Virus record (IMG/VR): IMGVR_UViG_3300044712_002668
Coordinates: 248,001 to 312,000 of that record
Direction: 5' to 3' (one strand)
DNA length: 64,000 nucleotides
The position numbers and the translations under genes are program-made. The notes under the pieces were generated by a model. It was given only the letters and a program-made list of their open reading frames with translations, was not told where the DNA came from and searched no databases. Positions 1-55,863 of this stretch are shown piece by piece. Within the stretch, counting starts at the first letter, position 1. The number at the start of each line of letters is the position of its first letter.

Positions 1-152
1 TTGGAGGTGGTGCTGAACAATGGTTGCCTATGCGGGGTGCAGGTTTTGCTGGGGGTGCGGGTTTTAATGCTCCTCAAAATTGTGTTCAGAATGATGGGGC
101 CGGGGGTAGTTATGGAGCTGGCAGTGGGGATGGTCGTGGACTTGAAGAATGA
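1..152 (+). CDS. Partial Gly-rich small protein (3' end of an MKVxILxKEDW family member)
   Basis: Frame from nt 3 reads GGGAEQW...GAGSGDGRGLEE*; its TGA overlaps the next ATG (ATGA). Confidence 0.7.
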   Translation, partial: GGGAEQWLPMRGAGFAGGAGFNAPQNCVQNDGAGGSYGAGSGDGRGLEE

Positions 153-367
153 AAGTAATAATCCTGAATAAAGAGCATTGGCAGATGCCAGAGAATAAAA
201 GTTATTTTCAAAGCGGTCACGGGACTGGAACTGGAATTGGTTTGGGTTTGGGATATGGATCTGGTGGTTTTGGAGTTGATAATGAGATGGGTAGTGGTAG
301 TGGTCTTGCTGATGGTGGTGGTAATGGGATGGGTGTTGGAAATGGCGGCGAGATACATGAAGAATGA
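149..367 (+). CDS. Gly-rich small protein, MKVxILxKEDW family
   Basis: MKVIILNKEHW followed by GxG-rich body. Confidence 0.85.
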   Translation: MKVIILNKEHWQMPENKSYFQSGHGTGTGIGLGLGYGSGGFGVDNEMGSGSGLADGGGNGMGVGNGGEIHEE

Positions 368-603
368 AAGTATTGATTCTTAAAAAAGATGATTGGATGA
401 TACCGGAATCTTATTGTCATTATACAAAGGGAAATGGTGATACTGAGACTGGTGGCTGGGGAGATGGTTCTGGTAATGGGATCGGAGATTTGGGAGGAAT
501 AAATCGTCATGGTTTTGTAAATGGTGAAGGTCAGGCGAGTGGTATGGCAAATGGAGATGGCCAAGGTTGGGGCGATGGATGTTCAGAACTCCTAATGATA
601 TGA
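364..603 (+). CDS. Gly-rich small protein, MKVxILxKEDW family
   Basis: MKVLILKKDDW; GDGQGWG near the C-terminus. Confidence 0.85.
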   Translation: MKVLILKKDDWMIPESYCHYTKGNGDTETGGWGDGSGNGIGDLGGINRHGFVNGEGQASGMANGDGQGWGDGCSELLMI

Positions 604-792
604 AAATAAAAAACATTCTAGATTTTCTCGTAACAACAATAATAAAATTGATTGGATTTGAGGACATCAGGGATGCCGAATTGTTTTTTGGTAAACCGAT
701 ATCAAATTGTTATAATGATGATTTGTCATTGACTGAAAATAAAAATATAATCGTAGAATTTATTAAGAAGAAAAACTTTGGTAGAAACTAAT

Positions 793-1038
793 ATGAAAGT
801 TATTATCCTGAATAAAGAGGATTGGCAGCTACCAGAAGAGAGAGGGCGTGCGCAAGGTTCTGGATTTGGAAGTGGTATAGATGGTTTTTATATTGCCAAT
901 GGTTCCGGTGTATCTTCCGAATTTATAACTGGCAGGGGTCAAGGTTGCGGCAATCACCATTTCAATAATGGTAGTCATGGAATGGGATTTGGAAATGCTA
1001 GGGGACATGGTGAAGGTAACGGACTAGGTTGGGAATAA
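793..1038 (+). CDS. Gly-rich small protein, MKVxILxKEDW family
   Basis: MKVIILNKEDW; start moved to ATG 793. Confidence 0.85.
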   Translation: MKVIILNKEDWQLPEERGRAQGSGFGSGIDGFYIANGSGVSSEFITGRGQGCGNHHFNNGSHGMGFGNARGHGEGNGLGWE

Positions 1039-1274
1039 TGAAAGTTATTATCCTGAATAAAGAGGATTGGATGATAGAAGATAGTGGTTTTGGTGGTGGT
1101 CACGGTGAAGGCTGGCCAAATGTAACTGGTAAAGGTTATGGCGATTATAAAACAGCACATAATTATGGCCGTGGAGCCGCCGATGGAATTGCCGATAATA
1201 TTGATACTCTAAATTATGGGGATGGAAATGCTATTGGTTGTGGTGATGGAGATGGTCAAGGTTTTGGAAATTGA
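1038..1274 (+). CDS. Gly-rich small protein, MKVxILxKEDW family
   Basis: MKVIILNKEDW; TAATG coupling to the previous gene. Confidence 0.85.
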   Translation: MKVIILNKEDWMIEDSGFGGGHGEGWPNVTGKGYGDYKTAHNYGRGAADGIADNIDTLNYGDGNAIGCGDGDGQGFGN

Positions 1275-1276
1275 TT

Positions 1277-1516
1277 ATGAAAGTAATGATTCTTAAGAAA
1301 GAAGATTGGATGATAAAGGAAGATAGAGGCTTTGGTGAAGGTGAAGGTTGTGGCGGGGTTCCTAGTTATCATCTTGCTTCTGTTGGATATGGAGAAAGTT
1401 CTTCTTTTCGGAAGGGGGATGGAAACGGTCTGGGGGAAGGTCAAGATGCATGCAACGGACGCGGCTTCTGTCACTATGGTTGTGGAGATGGCTCCGGTTG
1501 TGGATATGGAAAATGA
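1277..1516 (+). CDS. Gly-rich small protein, MKVxILxKEDW family
   Basis: MKVMILKKEDW. Confidence 0.85.
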   Translation: MKVMILKKEDWMIKEDRGFGEGEGCGGVPSYHLASVGYGESSSFRKGDGNGLGEGQDACNGRGFCHYGCGDGSGCGYGK

Positions 1517-1749
1517 AAGTAATTATTTTAGATAAAGAAGATTGGTTAAAGAAAGAATGTAGTTTTGGATGTGGTTATTGCGCTCAATATGGTATAGCCG
1601 AAGGTAGTGGTGTTTATTCTGGTAATTGCCTTGATTCTGGTATTACTCAAGATGGATCTGGAGAAGCTGATGGTTCCAGCTGTGGTGAAATGTTTTCTTG
1701 TTTAGGAAGAGGGTATTGTACAGGATCTGGTGGTGTATATTTGAGGTGA
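1513..1749 (+). CDS. Gly/Cys-rich small protein, MKVxILxKEDW family
   Basis: MKVIILDKEDW; ATGA coupling. Confidence 0.85.
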   Translation: MKVIILDKEDWLKKECSFGCGYCAQYGIAEGSGVYSGNCLDSGITQDGSGEADGSSCGEMFSCLGRGYCTGSGGVYLR

Positions 1750-1762
1750 TTGGTATTGAATA

Positions 1763-1996
1763 ATGAAAGTGCTAATCCTAAACAAAGAACAATGGTTATG
1801 GGAACAGCTTGGAGCTGGTTCAGGTAGTGGTGCTAATTATGATAGATATGCAACTGAAGGATATGGCTCTACATGTGATATAACTTATGGTTTTGGTTAT
1901 GGAAGAGCTGATGGTAGTGGAGATTGTAAATATGGAACAAGTACTGGGAGCGGGTATATTTTAGGTTCTGGTGATGGTCGTGGTAGCGGTGAATGA
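1763..1996 (+). CDS. Gly-rich small protein, MKVxILxKEDW family
   Basis: MKVLILNKEQW. Confidence 0.85.
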   Translation: MKVLILNKEQWLWEQLGAGSGSGANYDRYATEGYGSTCDITYGFGYGRADGSGDCKYGTSTGSGYILGSGDGRGSGE

Positions 1997-2003
1997 TTCT
2001 AAA

Positions 2004-2228
2004 ATGAAAGTAATTGTTTTAGATAAAAAATGTTGGATGATACCAGAAACAGGATGGGGTTCCGGACAAGCTACCGGTAATGCTGGGTATCATATTTCAG
2101 TGGTGAATGGTTGTGGTAGCACCATGGATGTTGTTTTTGGTAATGGTTGTGGCGGTAGTGGAATGAGTAAAAAATTCGGATCTGGTTTGTGTAGAGGTGA
2201 AGGTACTGGTAATGGAAACGGCTACTAA
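2004..2228 (+). CDS. Gly-rich small protein, MKVxILxKEDW family
   Basis: MKVIVLDKKCW. Confidence 0.8.
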   Translation: MKVIVLDKKCWMIPETGWGSGQATGNAGYHISVVNGCGSTMDVVFGNGCGGSGMSKKFGSGLCRGEGTGNGNGY

Positions 2229-2247
2229 TAACAAGGAAAGATACACC

Positions 2248-3078
2248 ATGAAAAAGAAGAACATCTCCAATTCAGAGATTGATCTTTCCATTTCGGTTCT
2301 TGAAGCTCTAGGATATGAACAAGAACTTTCCATTCTAAATTCTGTTCCTCCCGCAAAGAAAGTAAACATCATCCGGGCAATTGGAGAAATCAATAAGAAT
2401 CTGAATATTGTTTCCGGAAAGGTTGTTTGTGAAAGTTATCCCAAGTTGAAGCCTCCCATTGCTGCCAAGGTGATTCTCGGCATTCCAGTTGGTGAAGGGC
2501 TCACTCACAGGGAGCGTCATGAATGGTTGTCAGAAGGCGCTGAGCTTGAGCCTATCAAGTGGTTGCTCAGGGGTACCGGATTGGAAGCCCGGACATTGAG
2601 TGTGGCTCGTTGGCTTCTGAAGGTATTGAATAACGAGGAGCAGAAGGCTGCTTTGTATAAGACCCGGCGTGAGGGAAGGCTTGCGGATCATACGATTGAT
2701 TTGATGCCGAGTGATTGTGAGGGAGGAGTTAATGAAGCGATTGCCAGGCGAGAGGATCGAATGGCAGTCAATGAGTTTGGAGCTGAGAAGCTTTGTGAGC
2801 ATCCTCCTTGGATCAAGCGATTGGGAGGCCGGGTAACGGTGCTTGATACGGCGGTTGCTTTGGAGCGTGAGGGTCGGGAGATGAGCCATTGCGTGGGAGG
2901 TTATGCAAGCAATGTTAAGAACGGGACTAGCATTATTGTTTCCATCAAGGCATGGGGACATCGTGCAACGGTTGAGTATAATCGTTCTCGTAAGATTGTT
3001 CAGATGAAGAGCAAGGCCAACTCGGACCCGTCGAAGTTGTGCAAGCTGCTTGCAAAGTTGGCGGTGGGAGATGGCTAG
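2248..3078 (+). CDS. PcfJ-domain protein
   Basis: C-terminal LEREGREMSHCVGGY...ATVEY...IVQ motif; AAGGAA RBS before ATG 2248. Confidence 0.7.
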   Translation: MKKKNISNSEIDLSISVLEALGYEQELSILNSVPPAKKVNIIRAIGEINKNLNIVSGKVVCESYPKLKPPIAAKVILGIPVGEGLTHRERHEWLSEGAELEPIKWLLRGTGLEARTLSVARWLLKVLNNEEQKAALYKTRREGRLADHTIDLMPSDCEGGVNEAIARREDRMAVNEFGAEKLCEHPPWIKRLGGRVTVLDTAVALEREGREMSHCVGGYASNVKNGTSIIVSIKAWGHRATVEYNRSRKIVQMKSKANSDPSKLCKLLAKLAVGDG

Positions 3079-3230: not shown

Positions 3231-3452
3231 ATGAAGGTATTGATTCTTAAGAAAGAGGATTGGATGAAGCCGGAGACTGGTATGACTGGTAGAGGATCAA
3301 GTCAAGACAACGGTTACGGCGCTGGTTTTGGATACGGCACAGATCATGGATACGTTTATCGTGACGGCAAGAATGGTAGTTGTTATGGCCATGGTTATGC
3401 AGATGGTTTTGCTGGAAATGGTATTGGTTATGGTGGTGGTAATGGGAGCTGA
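3231..3452 (+). CDS. Gly-rich small protein, MKVxILxKEDW family
   Basis: MKVLILKKEDW; GYADG. Confidence 0.8.
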   Translation: MKVLILKKEDWMKPETGMTGRGSSQDNGYGAGFGYGTDHGYVYRDGKNGSCYGHGYADGFAGNGIGYGGGNGS

Positions 3453-3560
3453 CAGGTGATAAGGGTATTGGGCAAGGCGATGAGATAGACCATATCGAAT
3501 TTGAAGATGAATGGCAACCTCAAGTTGAAGATAATGAATGGCAGCGACTGCAAGACGAAT

Positions 3561-4070
3561 ATGAACGATAACATCACTCCCAGAGTTTATGTAGGAACCT
3601 ACGCCAAGTACAACTCCGGTAACCTTGACGGAAAATGGTTCGATCCTTCCTTGTTCGATTCCAAGGAGGATTTTCTAGAGGCCGTCCAGAATTATCACGG
3701 TCCCGGTGAACATGAATTCATGTTCCAAGATTGGGAAGGCATCCCAGCCAGGTTCATCTCAGAAAGTTATATCAATGAAGATCTCTGGGGTTATCTGGAT
3801 CAGGATGAGGAAACTCAAAAGATCCTGCTTGGATGGCTTCAGTATGAATTGAACGGCACCCTGGAAGCTGCCCAGGATAAGTTCATTGGTGTTTATGATT
3901 CTCCCAATGATTATGCTTATGAATACATTGAGAGTATGATGGATAAAAAGCAATTCGAAATCGTTCAGAATTATCTGGACCTTGATGCTATCGTCAGGGA
4001 TCTTGAATGTGGTTCTATTTATTTTGCACTTATTGATGGTCAAACTTACGTATATGATACAGCGCTATGA
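3561..4070 (+). CDS. ardA: Antirestriction protein ArdA (DNA mimic)
   Basis: PRVYVGTYAKYNSGNLDGKW and FMFQDWEGIP motifs; acidic protein. Confidence 0.9.
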   Translation: MNDNITPRVYVGTYAKYNSGNLDGKWFDPSLFDSKEDFLEAVQNYHGPGEHEFMFQDWEGIPARFISESYINEDLWGYLDQDEETQKILLGWLQYELNGTLEAAQDKFIGVYDSPNDYAYEYIESMMDKKQFEIVQNYLDLDAIVRDLECGSIYFALIDGQTYVYDTAL

Positions 4071-7705: not shown

Positions 7706-7906
7706 ATGAAAGTTTTGATTCTTAAAAAAGAAGATTGGATGAGAAAAGAATATGGACCTGGGGAGGGAGATGGTATGGGTTATGATGGAATTGGTATTGG
7801 TAAAGGAAAAGGTAGTAGTCAGAACTTTTGTATAAACTGTACTTATGAACTTAATATTAATGGTTTATTGACCTATGAAGGTCTGAATGATAGATATGCA
7901 CTATGA
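7706..7906 (+). CDS. Gly-rich family member with shortened Gly body
   Basis: MKVLILKKEDW; Gly-rich part about 25 aa, then an unrelated tail. Confidence 0.7.
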   Translation: MKVLILKKEDWMRKEYGPGEGDGMGYDGIGIGKGKGSSQNFCINCTYELNINGLLTYEGLNDRYAL

Positions 7907-8126: not shown

Positions 8127-9125
8127 ATGACTCAAACACAATCAATCAAGACTTCAAAGAAAACTCCTAAAAAGGAATTCTACTCTCCAGCATCTCCCAA
8201 GACATATAGAGCTGAGAAACCTGAGGTTTGGGCATCTGAACGAATCATGAATTTCATGATGGAGCGTTTGGAAGCATATAAGAAGAATCCTGATGGGAAG
8301 AAGATTGTATTGCCATGGCAGGCTACTTGGAGCCGTTCAACGATTCTTCCCCGCAGACATAAGACCAATAGAGTTTATCATGGTTTGAATTTGATGATGC
8401 TTTTGATGACGGGTTATGGTTCTCCATTTTATTTTTCGTATAAGGATATTTCGGAGCTTGGTGGTAAGGTTATCAAGGGACAGCATGGTTGGCCGGTGAG
8501 TTTCTGGTTTGAGGTCAAGAAGGAGCTTGCTGATGGTACCAAGGAAGGCACTGGATATTGGAAGTGTAGATATTTCAATATCTTCAATCTGGAGCAGACT
8601 GAGGGTATCGACCCTGCCAAGCTGCGTAAGATTGTAGTTGAAGAGGATAAGGATCATAATCCAATTGAGGAGTGTGAGGCTATTGTGGCTGGGTATGAGA
8701 ATCCTCCCAAGATTGTTTTCAAGGGACAGCAGCCATGTTACAGACCTCTGCTGGATCAGGTTGATATTCCGGCAATCAAGAAGTTCAAGACTCCTGAAGC
8801 CTACTATGCAACGTTGTTCCATGAGTTGGCTCACTCAACTGGTTCTGACAAGCGGCTGAATCGTGAGACTCTGGTGAAGGTTGCGGGTTTTGGAAGCCAT
8901 CTCTATTCCGAGGAGGAGTTGGTTGCCGAAGCTTGTGCCGCTATGCTCTGTCGTAAGGTTGGGATTGAGAATACTGTCATTGATAACTCTCTGGCTTATA
9001 TTGAAAACTGGATGAAGGCGCTTACCCCTGAGGTATTGGCAACATCCATCAAGGCAGCAGGTAAGGCGTATGAGCGGATAGTGGGAAACAGCGAGGCGGA
9101 GGAGAACAATGACGGAGAAGAATGA
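8127..9125 (+). CDS. ardC: ArdC-like ssDNA-binding / zincin antirestriction protein
   Basis: PWQ, YHGLN, GGKVIKG, FNLEQ, YYATLFHELAHSTG, YSEEELVAE. Confidence 0.85.
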   Translation: MTQTQSIKTSKKTPKKEFYSPASPKTYRAEKPEVWASERIMNFMMERLEAYKKNPDGKKIVLPWQATWSRSTILPRRHKTNRVYHGLNLMMLLMTGYGSPFYFSYKDISELGGKVIKGQHGWPVSFWFEVKKELADGTKEGTGYWKCRYFNIFNLEQTEGIDPAKLRKIVVEEDKDHNPIEECEAIVAGYENPPKIVFKGQQPCYRPLLDQVDIPAIKKFKTPEAYYATLFHELAHSTGSDKRLNRETLVKVAGFGSHLYSEEELVAEACAAMLCRKVGIENTVIDNSLAYIENWMKALTPEVLATSIKAAGKAYERIVGNSEAEENNDGEE

Positions 9126-33865: not shown

Positions 33866-34114
33866 ATGAAAGTTATAATTCTGAAAAAGAATGATTGGTA
33901 TGGATCAGAGTATGGTTTTGGTGCTACCAGAGATTATATTTATGGTTTCGGTGCCACCAGAGATTATTTTCATGGCTGTGGTTATGGGGTTAGCGATGTG
34001 GATGGCGGTGGTTGGGGTGTTGGTGCTGGTTATGGAGGCGGTTGTGGTTTTGGAGATGGAGATGGTTATGGTGATATTAGATGGAAAAATACAAAAGGTG
34101 TTTGCGAGTATTGA
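33866..34114 (+). CDS. Gly-rich small protein, MKVxILxKEDW family
   Basis: MKVIILKKNDW; internal 30-nt duplication (YGFGATRDY x2). Confidence 0.8.
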   Translation: MKVIILKKNDWYGSEYGFGATRDYIYGFGATRDYFHGCGYGVSDVDGGGWGVGAGYGGGCGFGDGDGYGDIRWKNTKGVCEY

Positions 34115-34359
34115 TCCTGAATAAACATAATTGGATGAGAGAAGAGGATGGCGCTGGCTATGGTCATGGCGATGGTCATGGCGATGGTTGTGGCGATGGT
34201 AATGGTTGCAATAGTGACTCCAGTAGTCATTATTATTATCGTCATGGCCGTGGTTATGCTGATGGATTTGGTTTTGGAACAGGTATTGGCGAAGGAAGTG
34301 GCCGTAATCCTGGTTGTGGTTATAATGGTTATGGCGATGGAATTTTATATGAAAGATGA
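34102..34359 (+). CDS. Gly-rich small protein, MKVxILxKEDW family (TTG start)
   Basis: (M)RVLILNKHNW; GYADG. Confidence 0.7.
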   Translation: MRVLILNKHNWMREEDGAGYGHGDGHGDGCGDGNGCNSDSSSHYYYRHGRGYADGFGFGTGIGEGSGRNPGCGYNGYGDGILYER

Positions 34360-39387: not shown

Positions 39388-40260
39388 ATGGCATCTCACT
39401 CCACTGGTAGCTTTGTAATTGGTTTCGGACCTCTCACGTGTATGGTAAAGACCTACGTTTCAGCATCACCAACTCGTATTGGGTTCAAGTGGATCAATAA
39501 GAAGACGGGTAATCTTGTTGGTCAGAAGAAGTTTGACAAGGTAACTAACGAGGAAGTTCAGCAAGCAGATATTATTAATGGATATGAATATTCCAAGGAT
39601 AAGTATCTACACTTTACTGATGTAGAGGTAGATAATATGCAGGCTACGAAGAAGGATACGATGGAGATTGCGGAGTTCGTTCCGATCAGTTCCATTGATC
39701 CGTTGCAGGTAGAGAAGACGTTTTACCTACAGCCTGATAAGGGTCAGGATGGTAATTACAAGTTGTTCTCTGTTGTTCTAGCCAAGTGTGGCAGGGCTGC
39801 TGTTGGTAAGTGGGTATCACGAGGCAAGGAACATCTTGTTGTGATTCGTGCTTATCAGCATGGAATTATTATGCACCAGATGTTCTATCATAATGAGGTG
39901 CGTGGTTTTGAGGATAAGTGTTCTGCTGTTCCGCTCAATGAGAGGAACGTAAAGATTGCTGAGGAAATGATTTCTTATGGTTTGAGTGAGACGTTTGATT
40001 CCAAGAAGTATGCAGATATGTTTGTTGATAAGTTGAATGCTGCCGTGGCAAAGAAGTTGGCCAATCCTGATGAGCCGATTACTGCTGATACCGGAGCTGC
40101 TTTGAAGGTTATTGATCAGGGCGATGCAATGCTCGCTTGGCTTGATGCAAAGCGTAAGGAGAAGGCCCAGCCTGTTGCCGAGCCTGTTGTTGAGAAGCCT
40201 GAGCCTCTCAAGTTGACCTCCAAGCCTGCCAAGAAGGCCAGGGCAAAGAAGGCTTCTTAA
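39388..40260 (+). CDS. ku: Ku DNA end-binding protein
   Basis: GSFVIGFG..., INGYEYSKDKY, IAEFVP..IDP, FYLQPD, basic C-terminal tail. Confidence 0.88.
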   Translation: MASHSTGSFVIGFGPLTCMVKTYVSASPTRIGFKWINKKTGNLVGQKKFDKVTNEEVQQADIINGYEYSKDKYLHFTDVEVDNMQATKKDTMEIAEFVPISSIDPLQVEKTFYLQPDKGQDGNYKLFSVVLAKCGRAAVGKWVSRGKEHLVVIRAYQHGIIMHQMFYHNEVRGFEDKCSAVPLNERNVKIAEEMISYGLSETFDSKKYADMFVDKLNAAVAKKLANPDEPITADTGAALKVIDQGDAMLAWLDAKRKEKAQPVAEPVVEKPEPLKLTSKPAKKARAKKAS

Positions 40261-43833: not shown

Positions 43834-44793
43834 CTATTTGATTTGATTATAAACATCTTTAAATAATCTTGCTATCTTTACAAGCTCACTTATATGTGAG
43901 CTTTTTTTATTCTTACCAAACACACCAGAGATATACTTTTCTGCTTCTTGCAGGGTTTTCAATGGTTCCTTCCTTAATACGGATTCGTGTTTGGTTGCTT
44001 TACCATGAGCCTTTTCATAATTATCCCCATCATAAATCATATGTTCACACTCTATGATTTCATGAATGAGTATAGGGATGAGTTCTTTCTTTTCATAGTG
44101 TGATTCAATCCATATCGTATTGTTTGGTACATAGGAATACCTTCCAGGGTTTCCTCCCATAACAAAATCAGTATCAAACTTCTGACGTACCAAATTACCA
44201 TCTACAAGATTTACTTTATAACCGTATACTTCGCCAATTTCTTTTGTAACAACATCTTTATCAGAGATGTTTTTATGTTTTTTATATTTATCCATTCTCT
44301 TTTCTGGAGAATCTTTCTCTTTCCATAAAACAATTATACGTTTATCTACGGGTTTTTTATGGTTATCCTTTGGAAATGTAAACCATATCGGAGCGAATTC
44401 TTTTTGTGTGATGATTTTATATTCACCAACTGAAGGATCCATTATCTCTATCTCTGTATCGTTGATGTCAGATACTACAGAATAATGAGAATCATCATTG
44501 CTAAACCACTCTACAATGATTTGATAATTCTCTTTCAATAATTTCTCTACTTCTTTAAAAGAAGAATTGTTTTTTATATAACCTTTAAGATTATATTTCT
44601 TGGCACCGCTTAAAAGATCTTCAGCTTCTATACCATGCTCTTCAGTGGCACCGATATTCTTGGCAATATCTTCCAACTCTTCATGGGTATTATAGAAATG
44701 CAGGATGCTTTTCAGACATGCCGGTCCACAGAAACCTGGGGTCTGATCAATCGCTATAGGTTTTTTATAAAACTTTTCTTCAGCTTTCGTCAT
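43834..44793 (-). CDS. Peptidase C39-like domain fused to an HExxE domain
   Basis: Q..GFCGPACL, SHYSVV, IMDPS; C-terminal VDG..VR...IWIE...HEIIE...AHGKA. Confidence 0.75.
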   Translation of the reverse strand: MTKAEEKFYKKPIAIDQTPGFCGPACLKSILHFYNTHEELEDIAKNIGATEEHGIEAEDLLSGAKKYNLKGYIKNNSSFKEVEKLLKENYQIIVEWFSNDDSHYSVVSDINDTEIEIMDPSVGEYKIITQKEFAPIWFTFPKDNHKKPVDKRIIVLWKEKDSPEKRMDKYKKHKNISDKDVVTKEIGEVYGYKVNLVDGNLVRQKFDTDFVMGGNPGRYSYVPNNTIWIESHYEKKELIPILIHEIIECEHMIYDGDNYEKAHGKATKHESVLRKEPLKTLQEAEKYISGVFGKNKKSSHISELVKIARLFKDVYNQIK

Positions 44794-44833: not shown

Positions 44834-47269
44834 ATGAAAGCAAACAAAGAACAGAATTTAAACAAGCATTTGTACTGTGTGATGCTTATGGCCATGCATT
44901 GTGCTGAATATCTTGGCGTCAATGATACGGCTCTCAAAGAGGTCATCGGGCTTTCTGCTTTCCTTCATGACGTAGGTAAGGCTACCAAATATTTTCAAAA
45001 CATCTCCCTCAGGGAAGAGAAGACCAGCACCAAAAAGTTTTTCGATCTTATTCGTGAACAGTATCCCCAATTTTCCGGAGAGGATGGTAAGGATTGGTAT
45101 CCGAGGCATAACGAAATCTCATGGTTGTGGGCGGCTCTACACGCTACCGGTAAGTCTCTGTTCAAGAAGGTTGGCCTCCAAGCTATCTATTGGCATCACG
45201 GAACCTTTGATATCAACCCTATCCGAGATACTGATACCAAATCCCTTGTAGAAGAATTGACCAAGTTCTCTCCCGATGAATGGAAAACCATTGACCAAAC
45301 AATCAAATCCCTTATTGATAATACAAACTTTCCTTTTGATATTACAAAGTATCTTGATGATAACATTGAACATTGTAAGATGTCACCTTTGTTTGATATT
45401 GAAGATAAGGCTGCCAATAATGGCATGATTGAAAACGCTCAGCGTTGGGTTATTCGTAGTTGTGTGATGTATGCTGATGCTACTGTTTCAAGGATGTCTT
45501 CCGATGAATTGAATGATCTAATTCTCAATAGAAATCCAGCTACTTATTTCAAGCCTTATTATCTCTCTGTGAAGCCTGAGTTTGTTTGTCCTGAAGGTTA
45601 CGATCCGGAACGTTTCAGGATTCAGAGTGAGATTTATAAGAGTTGTAATCATACTACGGTTGTAAAGGCTCCTGCTGGTTTCGGTAAGACCTTGATTGGT
45701 TTGATGTGGGGCCTGCTACATGGACAACAGTTCTATTGGGTTTGCCCTCGTAATGATGTTGCCCAAGGCGTTTTCGAAAACATCAAGGAAGAACTCCGTA
45801 GACTTAACATCAATATCAATGTTGAATTGTTCCTGACATCGGAACGTCAAGACTCATTTGGACCGAATGTACCGCATGTACATGGTACGTGTGACATTGT
45901 GGTAACGAACATTGATATGTTGATGGCTCCATTGCAGAGTCACAAGCATGCATGCAGGGTTTTTGATATCAATGCTCGTAACATTATCATGGATGAGTTC
46001 CATGAGTTGATTGGTGATGAAGGAATGTTTTCGGCCTTTATCAATTATATGAGGGCTCGCAATTTGATTTGCTCAAATACGAGAACCTTGCTCTTGTCAG
46101 CTACTCCTTCCGTCCTGAATGAACTTTGGGATAGCGATACAAAGCAAACCAGGCTTCTTCCAGATGATGAACATCATTATAAGGCTCAGCATGATAAGCC
46201 TTATTACTTCAAGTTCGCTACTGCAATGCCCACCAAGCCGTTGCCTGGCTCGTTGAGTATGTATTGCAGCATTTCCACTGTCATTGTAAATTACAATCCA
46301 AGAGTTCATACGGCAATTATTCACAGTCATTATCCAACGAATTACAAGAAGGACATTTTGAATGGAATTTTCAAGACCTTTGGAAAGGGAGGGGATAAGA
46401 ATGGGACTGTGATATCAGCGCCTATTCTACAGGCTGCATTTGATATTTCATTCAGGAGTATGTATAAGGCAGTTGAATCTCCTGAGGGAGACATTCAGCC
46501 ACTTGGGCGTGTGAATCGTTGGGGAGAGTTGGAGAGTGCAGAGGTTGTGTTGGTACCTTTGGCGGCTTCTAATCCTAGTGAACGGGGAGCAATCAATACC
46601 CGATATGATTTGGACCTGCACCGGGATTGGTTGAAGTATTTGAAGAACAATATAAAGTCAAAGGCTACGTTGGATGAGGTTTATTCTTTGTATAATGCTT
46701 ACAATAATGTTGCCAAGCCGAAGTTGATATCTTATTATTACAGGTGTTTGGATAAGGCAACTGAGAGATTGTCAAAGTTCTTCCCCAAGGACTTCGGAGT
46801 TTCCCGGCCTTCTCGTGATAATATCAAATCGGTTTCAAATCTGAGAAGTTATTCTCCATCATTCTTTATTGTAGTAAGGAATTTGAAGACCAAGGATTGG
46901 CATCCATTTGCTTTCAATATTCAGAACTATGATTTGGATGAGTGCATAAGTGAAAACCGGGAGAAGTTGGAAGCGTATACAATTAAAACTGTTATGGAGC
47001 ATTTGAATGAATTGAAGTTTGAGGATGGCGAATGTCATTTTGATTATAGTAAGATTTTGAATAGGTTCTTCAATCCAAAGAGGAAGAGTGAGAAGAAGAT
47101 TGGTGGCAAGCTTGTAAAGATAACTTCCAAGGTTCGTAAGAATTATAAGGCAGAAGATTTTATTGATTATATCAGGGAAACAAAAACGCCATTGCCGGTG
47201 TTTGATAGGTTCTTTGATCCTGTTCGTGGTTTGGTTAAGGAAGAGTTTTTGTACGCAATCAATTATTGA
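44834..47269 (+). CDS. cas3: Cas3 HD nuclease-helicase (no N-terminal Cas2 domain)
   Basis: KHL...LHDVGK HD domain, HHG, YAD; APAGFGKT, DEFH, SAT, QPLGRVNR. Confidence 0.92.
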   Translation: MKANKEQNLNKHLYCVMLMAMHCAEYLGVNDTALKEVIGLSAFLHDVGKATKYFQNISLREEKTSTKKFFDLIREQYPQFSGEDGKDWYPRHNEISWLWAALHATGKSLFKKVGLQAIYWHHGTFDINPIRDTDTKSLVEELTKFSPDEWKTIDQTIKSLIDNTNFPFDITKYLDDNIEHCKMSPLFDIEDKAANNGMIENAQRWVIRSCVMYADATVSRMSSDELNDLILNRNPATYFKPYYLSVKPEFVCPEGYDPERFRIQSEIYKSCNHTTVVKAPAGFGKTLIGLMWGLLHGQQFYWVCPRNDVAQGVFENIKEELRRLNININVELFLTSERQDSFGPNVPHVHGTCDIVVTNIDMLMAPLQSHKHACRVFDINARNIIMDEFHELIGDEGMFSAFINYMRARNLICSNTRTLLLSATPSVLNELWDSDTKQTRLLPDDEHHYKAQHDKPYYFKFATAMPTKPLPGSLSMYCSISTVIVNYNPRVHTAIIHSHYPTNYKKDILNGIFKTFGKGGDKNGTVISAPILQAAFDISFRSMYKAVESPEGDIQPLGRVNRWGELESAEVVLVPLAASNPSERGAINTRYDLDLHRDWLKYLKNNIKSKATLDEVYSLYNAYNNVAKPKLISYYYRCLDKATERLSKFFPKDFGVSRPSRDNIKSVSNLRSYSPSFFIVVRNLKTKDWHPFAFNIQNYDLDECISENREKLEAYTIKTVMEHLNELKFEDGECHFDYSKILNRFFNPKRKSEKKIGGKLVKITSKVRKNYKAEDFIDYIRETKTPLPVFDRFFDPVRGLVKEEFLYAINY

Positions 47270-47304
47270 AGTTCAATCAACCAACCAACAAGGAAAAAAA
47301 CAGC

Positions 47305-48417
47305 ATGTCAATCGCCAAGTCTCTGCTTCTTCGTGTCCTTTTCAATGGTGATGGAATCGTCAATTTTGATTCTCCGGATCAAAAGTATCTTTGGAACAAG
47401 TTGGAGGGGGCAGGTTTTATCAGGCACAATAATACCATGGTTGGAAAGGCCAGGTATGAGTCAAAAAAGGTAACTCGTCAGAATCAGGATAAAGAGGATT
47501 ATGAGAAGGAGGTTTATACACGGGTTCCAATCAATTCTGCAGACTGCATTCGTCATACCATGTATGAAGATGTGATGCGAACGCATCTTCCCAATGTTCA
47601 GCATGATGATGATTGGTTGATTCGTACCATTGCAAACCCTGCTTTCATCCAGCGTGGGTATATGTTCCCCCGTGCCAACAAGGAATCTTGGAAGCGCAAG
47701 TCTTCATTGGCTTTCGGTTATGCCAAGGGTATTACGCCAAGTGTTCCGGCAATTGAAACGTTTTCAAATTCTCAAGAAAGGGATAATGTTGAGAAGAGCG
47801 AGAGTGGTTCTGAGACATCTTTCTTCTCTCGTGAGGTTCGAGGACAAGTAAATTATGAAATGACTGGAGTAATTGATTTGGCTGAGCTTGGGTTTATCTC
47901 CTTGAGTGATGTTCATGATCGTTTGGGATTCCATCCCGATCTTGATGGTGAGTTTATTGAGATGTTCAAGAAGCATTTCAAGTTTGAGGATACGATTACT
48001 TCTGGGTATTTTGTTCGTGAAGGTGATGCTTATGAGATTCCTGAGCAGGGTATTCTGCTTGGGGACAAGTATGTTATCGCCATGGTTGAGGATATCCTGA
48101 AGCGTTTGGCCAGGTTCAATTTGGTTCGTACCACTACTGGTTTTCTTCAGACTGCCAAGGTTGAGGTTATGGTTGTCAAGGATCCTTTGACTGACCGTGT
48201 TACCAATACTGATGGTTGGATTAATGTTTTTGATAATGGTAAGTTTTCTGTTGACTTTTTGAAGGGTCTCAAGATTGAGCGTGTTTATAATGAGACCTCT
48301 ATTGAGGAGGCTATTGAGAAGGTTCGGCATTATAAGGAACTGAAGAATGTTGATGAGCCGGTTGTGGAAGCCAAGCCCCCGAAGAAGCCGCGTGGCAAGA
48401 AAGAGGCGGCGGCATGA
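47305..48417 (+). CDS. cas7: Cas7, type I-F2 (I-Fv)-like
   Basis: GDGIVNFD, INSADCIRH, QRGYMFP, KRKSSL, TSFFSR, LGFISLSDVHDR, EQGILL match, in order, motifs recalled from Shewanella Cas7fv; AAGGAA RBS. Confidence 0.85.
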   Translation: MSIAKSLLLRVLFNGDGIVNFDSPDQKYLWNKLEGAGFIRHNNTMVGKARYESKKVTRQNQDKEDYEKEVYTRVPINSADCIRHTMYEDVMRTHLPNVQHDDDWLIRTIANPAFIQRGYMFPRANKESWKRKSSLAFGYAKGITPSVPAIETFSNSQERDNVEKSESGSETSFFSREVRGQVNYEMTGVIDLAELGFISLSDVHDRLGFHPDLDGEFIEMFKKHFKFEDTITSGYFVREGDAYEIPEQGILLGDKYVIAMVEDILKRLARFNLVRTTTGFLQTAKVEVMVVKDPLTDRVTNTDGWINVFDNGKFSVDFLKGLKIERVYNETSIEEAIEKVRHYKELKNVDEPVVEAKPPKKPRGKKEAAA

Positions 48418-49316
48418 GCAAGTATATTCTGCTTCTGGATTTTCAAAACGCAGGAATCTTTAAAAAGTATTGGCATAAAACAGAGCCTCGCTCTGCTTCC
48501 GGTGATGACCGTATTTTTGATGGAAAGAATTCCGATTATCGTCGTAAGGATCAATGGATTGAACCTTCTACGGTAACCTTTCATTATAGTTTTATTGAGA
48601 ATGTTTTGAGAGTTCTTGCCGGGCGTAGACCCGTTCCTAAGTATCGCTCATCCTGTGTTGAACATGATGATGATATAATCAGGTTGGCTAAAAATAGTTA
48701 TGTAAAAATTGATGCATTGGTCAGGCATTGGGAGGGGAAGCCTGACACATTTGCCACAGAGACCATGACAGTCAGGAAGGCGTCATGGAATGCATGGAAT
48801 CAGGGTTGTATAGTTGGTTGGAAAAGGTTGGAGAATTTGTTGCCTGAGGATTTGTTCAATGAATTCTGTAGATTGGTTGAGAATATTTTTGGAATTGATT
48901 ATTATAGAAAGGTTACGTTGAGTAAGGTTATTGAGAAGATTCATACGATGAAGAATGATAAGAGGATCATATCATTGTGTGACAGGGCGGTAGCCGTTTC
49001 GTGTACAAATTTCAAGCATCTATTGTTGGAAACTGGGCAGCCAACATTTTTTCAAGCCAGTTATAAGAAGTATGGGGATTCAACGGAAGCGAATGTTTGT
49101 ATGAGAACCTTGACTGTGAAGGGAATTGCTGATGTAAGCAGATTGGATGGTATGATTGGAGTACCTGTAACGGCTGAAGAGTTGGAGATGTTCCGCAAGG
49201 GTCGTGGATTTGCCACATTGTTTGATGGGGGTTTGGTAACTATAAACAAGGTTGTAGATTTGGAGTATTCAAACACTGGTGTAGTTTTGAATGGGTATAC
49301 GCAAGCACTACAATGA
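48414..49316 (+). CDS. cas5: Cas5, probably Cas5fv-like (enlarged, replacing Cas8)
   Basis: Position in operon, 300 aa, IENVLRVLAG helix, helical insert, C-terminal GFATLFDGGLVTI Gly loop. Confidence 0.65.
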   Translation: MSKYILLLDFQNAGIFKKYWHKTEPRSASGDDRIFDGKNSDYRRKDQWIEPSTVTFHYSFIENVLRVLAGRRPVPKYRSSCVEHDDDIIRLAKNSYVKIDALVRHWEGKPDTFATETMTVRKASWNAWNQGCIVGWKRLENLLPEDLFNEFCRLVENIFGIDYYRKVTLSKVIEKIHTMKNDKRIISLCDRAVAVSCTNFKHLLLETGQPTFFQASYKKYGDSTEANVCMRTLTVKGIADVSRLDGMIGVPVTAEELEMFRKGRGFATLFDGGLVTINKVVDLEYSNTGVVLNGYTQALQ

Positions 49317-49834
49317 ACCTGTATAAAATCCACAAGGCATTTGCGAATCCTTATCAGAACCACCAGGCATTGAAGAACTTGTTTCTGGGAGAGGGGCGGG
49401 TTCTTTTCCAGAACTTGGGTTCTTCTTTATTGGTGCTTTCTCAAATAAAGTTGAGCGATGAATACCGGAATAACTTTTTGATTGATTTTCTTGATATTGA
49501 TAATTGTTTGAATGGTGACATTATGAATTTTTCTATCAGGTTGAATGCTTGCAAGGGCAGTCAGGGCAAGCGATATACGTTGAAGGAGGATGAATTTGAG
49601 AGGTGGGTTGATTGGAAGATGGGACAAGCTGGAGTTTCATTGGTTAAGAAGAGCATTCATAATGAGGGAGTTATTGTTAGTGACAGGCAGGGTGGGCATT
49701 GTTATCATGCTTCATTGTTTGTATCTGGTATATTGAAGGTTGAGGATAGGGTTTTGTTCAGCAAATCGGTTGAGCTTGGCATTGGACATGGCAAAGCTTT
49801 CGGGTTCGGGTTGTTGAATGTGTTTACGTGTTAG
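49313..49834 (+). CDS. cas6: Compact Cas6e-like crRNA endonuclease
   Basis: YQNHQALKNLF, FSIRLNACK, GILKVED...GIGHGKAFGFGLL. Confidence 0.85.
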   Translation: MNLYKIHKAFANPYQNHQALKNLFLGEGRVLFQNLGSSLLVLSQIKLSDEYRNNFLIDFLDIDNCLNGDIMNFSIRLNACKGSQGKRYTLKEDEFERWVDWKMGQAGVSLVKKSIHNEGVIVSDRQGGHCYHASLFVSGILKVEDRVLFSKSVELGIGHGKAFGFGLLNVFTC

Positions 49835-51460
49835 AGTTCTCTACTGGTTTTTGTAGGGATTGAAATAAATCTGTCGCTCAGCGCTCCTTTGCCTCGTTGA
49901 ATTGAATTCCCTACTATATTATGTAGGGGTTGAAATGAGCAATTGGCCATAGCTTTCAGGGAACAATACGATCATTGAATTCCCTACTATATTATGTAGG
50001 GGTTGAAATCCCCCAACGACCTGGAGTTTTTACAGATCCAATTAAATTCCCTACTATATGTAGGGATTGAAACCGAATCAGGATATGTCGTCGTGGTTGT
50101 GTATCGGTATAATTGAATTCCCTATTATATAGGGATTGAAAAGTCGCATTCGAAGTCAAGACCGCTATTGGTAAAGTATTCCTACTATATGTAGGGATTG
50201 AAACACCCTGCGTTGGGCCCGAAAGAGACCGGCGGTTGTCCGATTGAATTTCCTACTGTATGTAGGGATTGAAATATAGGAGGCTCCCTCGGGGATGTGT
50301 CAGTGCGAACATTGAATTCCCTGCTATGTGTAGGGATTGAAATGATGTGGTCGGTGCCATATTCCTACCGCGTGACTGAATTTCCTACTGTATGTAGGGA
50401 TTGAAACTCCGTTGGTTCCCGCGAGATGGTTATCGTGGAGGTATTGATTCCCTATTATATAGGGATTGAAATAACGTTTTTGAAGGTCCGTCGCGTATAG
50501 CTTAGTTTAGTTTCCTACTATATGTAGGGATTGAAACGTGCGTATGACATAGAAGTGTGTTGCCGTGATGGTTCCCTGCTGTATGTAGGGATTGAAATCT
50601 TAGTTTCACCGGAATTCAGGTGATGACATTTATTTCCCTGCTTTATGTAGGGATTGAAATGCGAGCAGTCTAAATTCTTCGGCAGTCAGTTTGGAGTCGG
50701 TTTTCCTACCAAGGTAGGGATTGAAATGGTGGACATAACCAGAATAGTCGTGGACTTGTAGTTAATCCCTAATAAAATAGGGGTTGAAATGTAGTTGGCG
50801 GATTTAAAGGAGACCAACTAAATCTCCCTACAATATGTAGGGGTTGAAACTTTCTCTCTTTTCCGCGTCCATCAGTCTTTATGATTCCCCGCTATATGCA
50901 GGGATTGAAATCCGCAACCACCGTTTAGTCCTGCTAACATTACGTAGTTCTCCGCTATATGCGGAGGTTGAAACCCTACTCCGTCTTTCAGTGACGCTAC
51001 CGTTTTTATTCCCTATTTATGTAGGGGTTGAAATAAGGATGGATCCAATCATTGGGATGTTCTATTGTCTCCCTATTTATGTAGGGATTGAAACAGCGGA
51101 AGAACTCAATCTTTCCAAGTTTGATTGATAGTTTCCCTACTAAATATAGGGATTGAAATGCTATTTATGATATGATTCAGCGTGTCAAAATAGTTTTCCT
51201 ACTGTAGTGTAGGGATTGAAACTCCACTGCATCTAGTACAGCGAATGATTCTTAATGTCCCTGCTAATAAGCAGGGGTTGAAACTACCCTGATAGACTGC
51301 CTTCTATTGATTATGATGATTCCCTACAATATGTAGGGATTGAAATCGTCAGGCTATTGATGAGAATGCCATTGTTCAATGTCCCTGCTGATGTAGGGGT
51401 TGAAATCAAAGCACGCCTTCGGGCAGTACAATTAGAATCATCTCCCTACACCATGTAGGG
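49834..51460 (+). CRISPR. CRISPR array, 26 degenerate repeats and 25 spacers
   Basis: Consensus about (ATTGAA)TTCCCTACTATATGTAGGG[A/G]TTGAAA[C/T]; period 60-73 nt; last repeat lacks TTGAAA. Confidence 0.95.
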
Positions 51461-55662: not shown

Positions 55663-55860
55663 ATGAAAGTCTTAATTCTTAAGAAAGAAGATTGGAAATT
55701 GCCAGAGAATGATTCCAAATCAGATACTGGAGATGGTTTTGGAAAAGGGTTTGGAGGTGGATGCCGTCGCCCAACTTTTTACAGTAACGGTAAAGGAGAA
55801 GTAGTTGGTCATGGAGATGGTAATGGTAAGGGAGAGGGTTGTGGTATTAATTGGGTTTGA
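55663..55860 (+). CDS. Gly-rich small protein, MKVxILxKEDW family
   Basis: MKVLILKKEDW. Confidence 0.85.
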   Translation: MKVLILKKEDWKLPENDSKSDTGDGFGKGFGGGCRRPTFYSNGKGEVVGHGDGNGKGEGCGINWV

Positions 55861-55863
55861 TAA

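What the first reader, a model, noticed from the sequence alone, without database searches (positions are those of the whole stretch)
1..2228. Library of 17 Gly-rich microproteins with a constant head and hypervariable body
Seen: 16 complete genes plus one partial, in clusters at 1-2228, 33866-34359 and 55663-56575 and as singletons at 3231 and 7706. Each complete copy (65-85 aa) starts M(K/R)V(I/L/M)(I/V)L(N/K/D)Kx(D/H/Q/C/N)W, which is also conserved at DNA level (about atgaaagtnntnatnctnaanaaagaagattgg). The body is GxGxG blocks (GxADG, GDGxG) separated by freely varying loops that often contain Cys. Established: T-even gp38 adhesins use polyglycine-II scaffolds alternating with hypervariable segments. 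Inference: a diversified binder repertoire (anti-defence or host-adaptation) with a shared docking or export head, or leader/core RiPP-like precursors. No modifying enzyme is adjacent.
Basis: partly seen in the sequence, partly recalled or inferred. Interest (0 to 1): 0.78.

Follow-up and report, generated by a model that had tools for sequence, protein, structure and literature searches.

The report
Head-tagged glycine-X microprotein family in huge phage
An uncultivated huge phage carries 30 small genes that share a strongly conserved 15-residue start followed by a fast-changing, probably unfolded glycine-every-second-residue tail; no database describes the family, and it may be a set of proteins sent to one common destination, possibly the phage head.

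Summary
The window holds 16 complete copies and one partial copy at the stated coordinates. The whole 336-kb phage record holds 30, all on the + strand within an 81-kb accessory block.

What was shown:
- **They are real coding genes.** Every frame is open although synonymous sites are saturated. The genes are tightly packed, mostly with ATGA or TAATG overlaps.
- **The head is under protein-level purifying selection.** The head (M-K-V-[LI]-I-L-[NDK]-K-x-D-W-x-I-x-E) has omega of about 0.1 and varied codons.
- **The body is strict period-2 (Gly-X)n.** Gly columns are conserved. X positions are 8% identical, with omega of about 1.0-1.4.
- **AlphaFold2 models only the head with confidence.**
- **Copies are gained, lost and altered by recombination and slippage.** This happens through recombination inside the head and repeat slippage in the body.
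- **The family is unannotated.** It has no Pfam, PHROG, NCBIfam, PADLOC or PDB match.
- **Relatives exist only in metagenomic contigs that share accessory genes with this phage.** One has about 36 copies in 10 kb.

The gp38/PGII analogy and the RiPP reading are not supported.

My best mechanistic guess, at about 0.27, is that the head is a T4-like capsid-targeting propeptide cut after its near-invariant Glu, and that the bodies are injected, disordered payloads. Function remains untested.

The parts
1..152 (+). 3' part of family copy (the gene starts 93 nt upstream of the window, genome 247907)
   Evidence: HMM hit 9e-20
149..367 (+). family copy, 72 aa, ATGA overlap on both sides
364..603 (+). 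family copy, 79 aa
793..1038 (+). family copy, 81 aa; absent from a second sample (L004), with the junction inside the head
1038..1274 (+). family copy, 78 aa; its 33-nt head is identical to that of copy 793
1277..1516 (+). family copy, 79 aa
1513..1749 (+). family copy, 78 aa, 7 Cys
1763..1996 (+). family copy, 77 aa
2004..2228 (+). family copy, 74 aa; its end overlaps the PcfJ-like gene (2197-3078)
3231..3452 (+). single family copy, 73 aa, 48 nt upstream of ArdA
7706..7906 (+). single family copy, 66 aa, with a half non-Gly tail; two genes upstream of ArdC-like
33866..34114 (+). family copy, 82 aa, with an internal 30-nt tandem repeat (33911-33982)
34102..34359 (+). family copy, 85 aa, TTG start, with an internal 12-nt x 4.2 repeat (34155-34205)
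55663..55860 (+). family copy, 65 aa
55864..56097 (+). family copy, 77 aa
56094..56342 (+). family copy, 82 aa
56339..56575 (+). family copy, 78 aa; its stop overlaps the start of a metallophosphoesterase gene (56575-57426)

Best explanation
These are translated two-module microproteins of a huge tailed phage.

**Shown:**
- Module 1 is a 15-residue N-terminal head: four aliphatic residues, then [DN]-x-x-D-W-x-[IVL]-x-E. It is held by strong purifying selection and is the only part that structure prediction models with confidence.
- Module 2 is a 50-70-residue (Gly-X)n tail. Only the glycine register is conserved. X is free to change and the tail is predicted to be disordered.
- The family grows, shrinks and diversifies in two ways: unequal recombination inside the conserved head, and repeat slippage in the tail.

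**Inferred, the mechanism I commit to:**
- The head is an address tag of the T4 capsid-targeting-sequence type. It would take the protein into the assembling prohead.
- The prohead protease would then remove the head by cutting after the near-invariant Glu (I-x-E).
- The unfolded Gly-X bodies would be packed with the DNA and ejected into the next host. There they would act in bulk as an early counter-defence or host-takeover cocktail, alongside the anti-restriction genes interleaved with them (ArdA, ArdC-like, PcfJ-like).
For: **Coding and selected**
- All 30 ORFs are open, and the other frames are closed.
- Across all pairs the head gives pS 0.715 against pN 0.236, with mixed codons: Val3 uses GTA/GTC/GTT/GTG, and Glu15 uses GAA and GAG 14:14.
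- In the youngest pairs the head omega is about 0.1 and the body omega is 0.54-0.86. Non-Gly body positions are at 1.0-1.4.

**Modular**
- AlphaFold2 gives pLDDT 89 and 73 for residues 1-20 and below 50 for residues 21-78.
- The ESM Atlas model has pLDDT 0.34.

**Tag-like head**
- Across 70 distinct members from this phage and five other metagenomic loci, W is present in all 70 (it was used to anchor the register), E sits at W+4 in 64 of 70, and I/V/L sits at W+2 in 40 of 70.
- In other lineages the head keeps this core while its N-terminal extension varies by 0-9 residues.

**Precedent**
- T4 IPs and Alt carry 10-20-residue N-terminal CTS propeptides that gp21 removes (PMC7411985).
- The T4, phiKZ, 201phi2-1 and SPN3US prohead proteases all cut after Glu. 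The SPN3US ejection-protein paralogs gp53 and gp54 share an identical 15-residue N-terminus ending at E-15 (PMC5694885).

**This is a tailed phage with a prohead protease**
- TerL scores 2.6e-57 and portal 2.1e-53.
- A head-maturation-protease domain scores 8e-17. Its invariant His and Ser align with the T4 gp21 residues that I take, from my own knowledge, to be catalytic His85 and Ser140.

**Turnover**
- L004 lacks exactly one cassette, with the junction in the 36-nt shared head.
- Contigs from related strains show different neighbour joins.
- Between L020 and L021, both indels are in-frame and lie in family genes.
- Some copies contain internal tandem repeats.

**Neighbourhood:** ArdA, ArdC-like, PcfJ-like, SNF2, Ku and CRISPR-Cas I-Fv.
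Against: - There are no expression or virion data of any kind, and no RNA run could be listed.
- The head HMM finds no other protein type in the genome (best non-family E 1.2). The tag is therefore not shared with other cargo, as the T4 CTS is.
- The protease could not be placed in the Glu-specific gp21 family. It has no PF03420 hit, but that search rang nowhere, so it is uninformative. BLASTP gives E 0.15 and hhalign E 0.11 with probability 0.5.
- The genes are packed, often with ATGA or TAATG overlaps, into long operons with ArdA- and ArdC-type genes. From my own knowledge, these are early genes in other elements. Prohead loading needs late synthesis.
- Bodies are mildly acidic (net charge mostly -1 to -7). 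From my own knowledge, T4 IPII and IPIII are basic.
- An omega near 1 at X positions fits an unconstrained linker as well as an arms race.
- The homo-oligomer prediction gave no answer.
Confidence: 0.27

Rival explanations
1. Cytoplasmic anchored-tail effectors. The proteins are made early and never packaged. The head docks, as a short linear motif or by beta-strand addition, onto one common host or phage hub. The disordered Gly-X tail acts as a steric block, decoy or sponge. The many copies mainly supply dose, and X positions drift.
For: - The genes are co-directional and tightly packed with anti-restriction genes.
- The head is used only with Gly-X tails.
- X positions have omega near 1 and 8% identity, which is what neutrality predicts.
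- All 30 copies are kept open, which fits selection for dose.
Against: - No partner has been identified.
- Dose alone does not explain why copies with saturated dS are all retained rather than homogenised.
- The near-invariant Glu at the module boundary has no special role in this model.
Confidence: 0.25
2. Self-assembling material. Period-2 (Gly-X)n rich in Tyr, Phe, Asn, Asp and Ser forms silk-like or kinked beta-sheets, or a condensate. Examples would be a replication-factory or capsid-interior matrix, or a capsid-surface brush. The head would act as the anchor or nucleator.
For: - The period-2 Gly pattern puts one all-Gly face on a beta-strand.
- The composition is G 33%, Y, S, D and N about 6% each, with 106 aromatic-Gly dipeptides.
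- From my own knowledge, this resembles the low-complexity domains that phase-separate.
- The same (G-[YND])n module recurs in other phage proteins, for example after DUF7666.
- Many copies fit a bulk material.
Against: - The tetramer prediction gave no answer, which is neither support nor evidence against.
- The bulky and charged X residues differ from crystalline silk.
- Nothing explains the conserved W and E of the head.
Confidence: 0.12
3. Leader/core peptide precursors, in the manner of RiPPs or Gly-rich microcins. The 15-residue head is a leader. It is removed by the phage's stand-alone C39-like cysteine peptidase or by a host enzyme, and the Gly-rich core is modified and/or released at lysis.
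For: - The size split (15 + 50-70 residues) and the Gly-rich core recall class II microcins (my own knowledge).
- A C39-family peptidase with an intact Cys and His context, plus an HExxH motif, is encoded at 43834-44793 on the - strand.
- There are weak NCBIfam hits to GrrA/OscA and to microcin B17, one copy each, at E 0.013 and 0.018.
Against: - There is no Gly-Gly, Gly-Ala or Gly-Ser at the junction. The junction reads E-[ND]-G.
- The record has no radical SAM, YcaO or ABC ATPase, and all three searches rang in control genomes.
- The peptidase is 10 kb away on the opposite strand.
- The NCBIfam hits do not survive correction for 28 queries.
- Bodies in related phages are pure (G-[YDN])n low complexity.
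Confidence: 0.07
4. Folded glycine scaffold that displays variable loops. This would be a gp38-like PGII or beta-roll binder library under diversifying selection.
For: - Conserved Gly columns alternate with variable positions.
- Non-Gly omega is 1.0-1.4 in two young pairs.
- PGII domains are known to be hard to predict (PMC6851490).
Against: - The period is 2, not the poly-G or period-3 pattern of PGII.
- Gly is 33%, against more than 50% in gp38 (PMC6851490).
- One RTX motif (GG.G.D) occurs in 30 bodies.
- pLDDT is below 50 throughout the body in two runs.
- There is no PDB sequence relative.
- Length and register vary freely by slippage.
Confidence: 0.06
5. Functionless, selfishly amplified coding repeats.
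For: - X positions evolve as if neutral.
- Cassettes come and go between strains.
Against: - The head omega is about 0.1 while synonymous sites are saturated.
- All 30 frames are open and the alternative frames are closed.
- The head core is conserved across distant phage lineages.
Confidence: 0.04

Closest known systems
T-even phage internal proteins (IPI, IPII, IPIII, Alt) with the capsid targeting sequence
   Same: - Small phage proteins with a short (10-20 aa) conserved N-terminal tag ending in Glu.
- The bodies are otherwise diverse.
- They have a counter-defence role and sit in hyperplastic accessory loci (PMC7411985, PMC3012670).
   Different: - There is no sequence similarity.
- Here the bodies all share one Gly-X composition.
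- There are 30 copies, not 3-4.
- The tag is on no other cargo.
- Packaging and cleavage are untested.
Giant-phage ejection-protein paralogs (SPN3US gp53/gp54, phiKZ gp93)
   Same: - Paralogous families in jumbo phages.
- They share 15-residue N-termini that contain x-x-E protease motifs (PMC5694885).
   Different: - Those proteins are large and have 124-130-residue propeptides (PMC7411985, PMC5694885).
- They are not Gly-rich.
- The relation of this phage's protease to that family is unresolved.
gp38 adhesin polyglycine-II sandwich (phage S16 / T2-type)
   Same: Glycine-rich motifs alternate with hypervariable segments in a phage protein.
   Different: - gp38 is more than 50% Gly with poly-G runs, and its sandwich is embedded in a beta-helix adhesin (PMC6851490).
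- Here Gly is 33%, the period is strictly 2, the proteins are free-standing at 65-87 aa, and they are predicted to be disordered.
Class II microcins / double-glycine-leader bacteriocins and C39 peptidases
   Same: - A leader of about 15 residues plus a Gly-rich product of 50-90 residues (my own knowledge).
- A C39-family peptidase is present in the window.
   Different: - There is no GG/GA/GS cleavage motif.
- There is no ABC exporter.
- The peptidase is not adjacent.
- Bodies are polar and aromatic rather than hydrophobic Gly/Ala/Ser.
GrrA/OscA Gly-rich-repeat RiPP precursors (NCBIfam TIGR04260) and prochlorosin-type precursor libraries
   Same: - Small Gly-rich repeats with aromatic residues.
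- Many precursor genes with a conserved leader and a variable core (the prochlorosin comparison is from my own knowledge).
   Different: - Only 1 of 28 copies hits, at E 0.013.
- The record has no radical-SAM maturase.
(G-[YND])n modules in other phage proteins, e.g. DUF7666 (PF24703) proteins
   Same: The same dipeptide-repeat low complexity, flanked by a short hydrophobic strand.
   Different: - Those proteins carry a folded DUF7666 domain and a C-terminal strand.
- They lack the W...E head.
- The similarity is probably compositional.

Membership tests
T4-type capsid-targeted internal/ejection proteins | Short (10-20 aa) conserved N-terminal propeptide on otherwise divergent small proteins | tested here: met
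   The 15-aa head is 65% identical between copies. The body is 8% identical once shared Gly is removed.
T4-type capsid-targeted internal/ejection proteins | Propeptide ends in the protease motif: aliphatic or small residue, x, Glu | tested here: met
   E sits at W+4 in 64 of 70 members and I/V/L at W+2 in 40 of 70. The motif definition comes from PMC5694885 and my own knowledge.
T4-type capsid-targeted internal/ejection proteins | The phage encodes a Glu-specific prohead protease of the gp21/gp175 family | tested here: inconclusive
   A PHROG head-maturation-protease domain scores 8e-17. Against T4 gp21, only the His and Ser regions align, at E 0.11-0.15. The PF03420 search was uninformative.
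T4-type capsid-targeted internal/ejection proteins | The proteins are present in virions in processed form and are ejected | not testable with these tools
   The phage is uncultivated and there are no proteome or RNA data.
T4-type capsid-targeted internal/ejection proteins | The tag is shared by several unrelated cargo proteins | tested here: not met
   The head HMM recovers only the Gly-X family in the genome.
Double-glycine-leader bacteriocins/microcins | The leader ends in Gly-Gly, Gly-Ala or Gly-Ser | tested here: not met
   The junction is E-[ND]-G. G occupies W+5 in only 3 of 70 members.
Double-glycine-leader bacteriocins/microcins | A C39 peptidase-ABC exporter is encoded alongside | tested here: not met
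   A stand-alone C39-like protein lies 10 kb away on the opposite strand. The record has no ABC ATPase.
Radical-SAM or YcaO RiPPs (triceptide GrrA, TOMM/microcin B17) | The precursor matches the family model | tested here: not met
   One of 28 copies hits each model, at E 0.013 and 0.018, below any cut-off.
Radical-SAM or YcaO RiPPs (triceptide GrrA, TOMM/microcin B17) | A maturase (rSAM/SPASM or YcaO) is in the same element | tested here: not met
   PF04055 and PF02624 give no match in the 336-kb record, and the controls rang. The other 119 kb of the source contig was not searched.
gp38-type polyglycine-II sandwich | More than 50% Gly, with contiguous or period-3 Gly motifs forming PGII helices | tested here: not met
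   Gly is 33%. P(G at +1) is 0.09, P(G at +3) is 0.11 and P(G at +2) is 0.64. pLDDT is below 50.
RTX beta-roll | Nonapeptide GGxGxDxUx repeats | tested here: not met
   One GG.G.D match in 30 bodies.
Diversity-generating retroelement targets | A reverse transcriptase and template repeat are in the element | tested here: not met
   There is no RVT_1 in the record. Divergence is old, with saturated dS.

The most novel reading that the evidence does not exclude
This is an undescribed class of phage protein. A 15-residue conserved address tag is fused to a period-2 (Gly-X)n intrinsically disordered tail. The class is expanded to 30-36 paralogs per genome by tag-mediated unequal recombination and repeat slippage. 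It would form a combinatorial library of disordered polypeptides that huge phages deliver to, or dock at, one common site for host takeover or counter-defence. Its mode of action would have no characterised precedent.
Probability: 0.35. Interest if true: 0.8.

Novelty: new variant of a known kind. Interest (0 to 1): 0.62.

Why it matters
- **Scale.** The family accounts for about one gene in six across an 81-kb accessory block of a huge phage. A related metagenomic contig is even denser, with about 36 copies in 10 kb. Yet no protein-family database describes the family.
- **If the head is a capsid-targeting or docking tag.** That would extend the T4 internal-protein principle (one address, many payloads) to uncultivated huge phages. 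It would also give a very short, portable tag for loading cargo.
- **If the tails act as disordered effectors.** That would be a new way for phages to interfere with hosts.
- **Evolutionary case study.** A 33-nt conserved coding segment serves both as a selected peptide and as the substrate for cassette gain and loss.

Tried and rejected
- **Family libraries and PDB sequences.** Pfam, PHROGs, PADLOC, NCBIfam and PDB gave only low-complexity noise, such as keratin head, TrAA12 and ribosomal S10 tails.
- **Isolated phage records.** Megablast and tblastn found no match. The nearest TerL is only 25% identical.
- **IMG/VR scans.**
  - With alignment A1, the scan found no confirmed relative.
  - Alignment A3 was too divergent to build a search pattern.
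- **Protein searches.** The word-index search returned only this phage's own proteins. Only the exhaustive HMMER search found distant relatives.
- **Structure.**
  - Two AlphaFold2 runs left the body unmodelled, so I made no fold search.
  - The homotetramer prediction gave no answer.
- **Expression.** No RNA runs could be listed.
- **Promoters.**
  - The best sigma-70-like site is at 723-751 (11 of 12 matches). Chance gives 2.15 such sites per 64 kb, so I draw no inference on timing.
  - No 8-mer recurred in eight or more upstream intergenic regions.
- **DNA-level conservation of the head as a regulatory or RNA element.** Rejected. Third codon positions vary freely, and Rfam finds nothing.
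- **DGR.** Rejected, because there is no reverse transcriptase.
- **Conjugative plasmid rather than phage.** Rejected. There is no VirB4, and TerL, portal and protease are present.
- **Co-occurrence of the C39 peptidase in related contigs.** Could not be tested, because those records are not held.
Full report
**1. The observation**

The window is bases 248,001-312,000 of a single 335,988-bp IMG/VR record. That record was cut from a 454,833-bp JGI metagenome contig. Runs labelled rhizosphere metagenome hold the sequence, and runs labelled freshwater metagenome hold a related strain.

- There are 16 complete copies of 65-85 aa.
- The partial copy at 1-152 is the 3' part of a gene that begins 93 nt before the window.

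A profile built from the copies finds 30 members in the whole record. All are on the + strand and all lie between genome positions 235,514 and 316,645. The window therefore shows a little over half of the family.

Two copies use non-ATG starts. One is the window copy at 34102 (TTG). The other lies outside the window and reads L-G-V-I-I-L-D-K.

**2. They are genes, and selection acts on the protein**

- Each of the 30 frames stays open in only 0-1.5% of composition-preserving shuffles. The other two frames of the same segments carry 2-15 stops.
- Neighbouring copies, and their non-family neighbours, are joined by ATGA or TAATG overlaps or by gaps of 0-13 nt. This is the arrangement expected for translational coupling.
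- In the head (codons 2-15), synonymous differences across all 435 pairs are at saturation (pS 0.715). Non-synonymous differences are low (pN 0.236).
- Invariant residues use mixed codons. Val3 uses four codons, and Glu15 uses GAA and GAG 14:14.
- So the head is conserved as a peptide, not as a DNA or RNA element. Rfam finds nothing in the window.
- In the four youngest pairs, the head omega could be computed for two and is about 0.1. The whole-body omega ranges from 0.35 to 0.86; it is 0.54 and 0.86 in the two pairs whose body dS is not saturated. In those same two pairs, non-Gly body positions are at 1.0-1.4.

**3. Anatomy**

*Head.*
- In this phage the head reads M-K-V-[LI]-I-L-[NDK]-K-x-D-W-x-I-x-E.
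- Across 70 distinct members, including distant ones, the core is four aliphatic residues, then [DN]-x-x-[DE]-W-x-[IVL]-x-E-[ND]-G-x-G.
- W is present in all 70 (it was used to anchor the register), E is at W+4 in 64 of 70, and I/V/L is at W+2 in 40 of 70.
- Other lineages place 3-9 extra residues before this core.

*Body.*
- The body is 33% Gly with a strict period of two. P(G | G) is 0.64, 0.54 and 0.52 at +2, +4 and +6, and about 0.1 at odd offsets.
- Gly columns are conserved across the family.
- Once shared glycines are set aside, bodies are 8% identical, which is about chance.
- X is mostly S, D, Y, N, F or C. Net charge is mildly negative.

*Structure prediction.*
- AlphaFold2 with 28 sequences, and again with 67, models only the head with confidence. 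pLDDT is 89 for residues 1-10 and 73 for residues 11-20, with a short helix at residues 8-12.
- Every body residue is left below 50.
- The ESM Atlas model of one copy has pLDDT 0.34.
- A homotetramer prediction gave no answer either way.

**4. How the family changes**

- A 1.5-kb contig from another JGI sample (L004) is identical to the window except that it lacks copy 793-1037. The junction lies inside the 36-nt stretch shared by the heads of copies 793 and 1038.
- Those two heads have no synonymous differences, while their bodies are saturated. Heads and bodies therefore have different histories.
- Logan contigs of related strains end, or join differently, at heads. One example is an extra copy directly after 3452. 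Because repeats break assemblies, I treat this only as supporting evidence.
- Two near-identical relatives, L020 and L021, are 99.77% identical and differ by three substitutions and two indels. Two of the substitutions and both indels (in-frame, 6 and 12 nt) fall in family genes, which cover 30% of the sequence.
- Two window copies contain internal tandem repeats of 30 nt and 12 nt.
- Taken together, unequal recombination at the head adds and removes cassettes, and slippage reshapes the bodies.

**5. Relatives and context**

No Pfam, PHROG, PADLOC, NCBIfam or PDB family matches. No isolated phage carries the family.

The word-indexed search of 5.8 billion proteins returned only this phage's own products. 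The exhaustive profile search of 1.84 billion representatives added a handful of distant members.

Their contigs hold dense arrays:
- L018 has five copies in 1.5 kb.
- L019 has about 13 in 4.8 kb.
- L020 and L021 have about 14 each.
- L023 has four.
- L022 has about 36 in 10 kb.

The four longer contigs (L020-L023) share accessory genes with this phage: DUF6948, PcfJ, SNF2, metallophosphoesterase, ligase and Ku.

The record is a huge tailed phage:
- TerL scores 2.6e-57 and portal 2.1e-53.
- A head-maturation-protease domain is present.
- There is no VirB4.
- The closest isolate TerL is only 25% identical.

Within the window the family is interleaved with these genes:
- PcfJ-like
- ArdA
- ArdC-like
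- SNF2
- Ku
- a C39-like peptidase
- a type I-Fv CRISPR-Cas system
- an FtsK-like ATPase
- a metallophosphoesterase

**6. Mechanism**

*What is shown.* The protein is two-module. It has a strongly selected 15-residue N-terminal peptide and a sequence-unconstrained, glycine-registered tail that is predicted to be disordered. It is kept in many copies.

*What I infer.* The best-fitting known principle is the T4 capsid-targeting sequence.
- T4 IPs and Alt carry 10-20-residue N-terminal propeptides. These load them into the prohead core and are then cut off by gp21 (PMC7411985).
- T-even IPs are diverse counter-defence proteins that share only that tag (PMC3012670).
- The T4, phiKZ, 201phi2-1 and SPN3US prohead proteases all cut after Glu. 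The SPN3US ejection-protein paralogs gp53 and gp54 share an identical 15-residue N-terminus ending at E-15 (PMC5694885).
- The head here is the same length and ends in [IVL]-x-E exactly at the module boundary. The phage has a prohead serine protease. Its invariant His and Ser align with the T4 gp21 residues that I take, from my own knowledge, to be catalytic His85 and Ser140, although the overall similarity is not significant.

*Weak points.*
- The tag is on no other cargo.
- Expression timing is unknown.
- The genes share operons with genes that are early in other elements.

I therefore put this specific model at about 0.27. A purely cytoplasmic 'docked disordered tail' model is close behind at 0.25.

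**7.

*gp38/PGII.* Not supported. gp38 is more than 50% Gly with poly-G runs (PMC6851490). Here Gly is 33%, alternating, and G-G neighbours are rare.

*RiPP.* Not supported.
- The record has no radical SAM, YcaO or ABC ATPase. All three of those searches rang in control genomes.
- There is no double-glycine site.
- Only two insignificant NCBIfam hits appeared.
It is distant from any copy and on the other strand.

*'Diversified binder repertoire'.* Neither shown nor excluded. An omega near 1 at X positions is what neutral drift of a linker would also give.

**8. Verdict**

This is a real, selected, undescribed multigene family of uncultivated huge phages, with a clear modular architecture and a visible mechanism of cassette turnover.
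- Its kind, one conserved tag on many variable small proteins in a counter-defence neighbourhood, has a precedent in T-even internal proteins.
- Its sequence, its Gly-X body and its scale do not.
- Function is untested, and the decisive data would be virion proteomics and a protease cleavage assay.

Noticed in passing
window 44834-51460: The phage encodes a type I-F-variant CRISPR-Cas system. Cas3fv is at 44834-47269 (1.4e-67) and Cas7fv at 47266-48417 (3.4e-18). An unassigned 300-aa ORF lies at 48414-49316, and a PF08798 CRISPR-associated protein at 49313-49834. These are followed by roughly 25 degenerate repeats from 49831 to about 51460, with core CCCTAC-N4-6-GTAGGGATTGAAA[CT] and spacing of 60-73 nt. 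No Rfam CRISPR-DR family matched.
   Followed up: partly
window 43834-44793 (-): A stand-alone peptidase C39-family protein (E 5.4e-16) with a GFCGPAC Cys context and a downstream His. It also has a C-terminal HEIIECEH (HExxH-like) motif and no signal peptide or ABC-transporter fusion. It sits on the opposite strand, directly upstream of cas3.
   Followed up: partly
window 2197-3078, 3501-4070, 8127-9125; genome about 247.2-247.6 kb (L003 1214-1567): A set of genes typical of conjugative-plasmid leading regions sits inside a huge phage: PcfJ-like, ArdA, ArdC-N plus zincin peptidase, and DUF6948. In related contigs DUF6948 and PcfJ are adjacent. Here 11 family copies are inserted between them.
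   Followed up: partly
window 39388-40260; L023 5236-5964 and 7659-8519: The phage encodes Ku (1.5e-33). A related contig has an ATP-dependent DNA-ligase-like gene near Ku, which suggests a phage end-joining module.
   Followed up: no
genome 314211-314696 (L002 2211-2693): A 161-aa ORF with an elongation factor Ts domain (PF00889, 2.2e-07) lies just upstream of the last family array.
   Followed up: no
window 53016-54059 and 56575-57426: An FtsK/SpoIIIE-family ATPase (5e-32), and a calcineurin-like metallophosphoesterase whose start overlaps the stop of the last copy of the 55663-56575 array. The same phosphoesterase recurs in relative L023.
   Followed up: no
proteins P0032, P0033, P0035, P0038 (other metagenomes): Phage proteins of about 150 aa are built as DUF7666 domain + (G-[YND])n repeat + a short hydrophobic C-terminal strand (N-I-Q-x-I-L-x-F). 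Other proteins carry the same repeat after different N-terminal domains. The Gly-X dipeptide repeat therefore looks like a recurrent module in phage proteins.
   Followed up: partly
window 1-2000: GC skew reaches 0.505 over the first array, compared with 0.02-0.34 in the rest of the + strand of the window. This is explained by the density of GGN glycine codons and is not a replication signal.
   Followed up: yes
whole record / source contig: IMG/VR labels the 336-kb record a 'provirus' (CheckV 78%) cut from a 454,833-bp contig. The remaining 119 kb was not available here, so it is open whether this is an integrated element or a larger phage genome. Homologs of its protease domain occur on contigs of up to 506 kb.
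   Followed up: no
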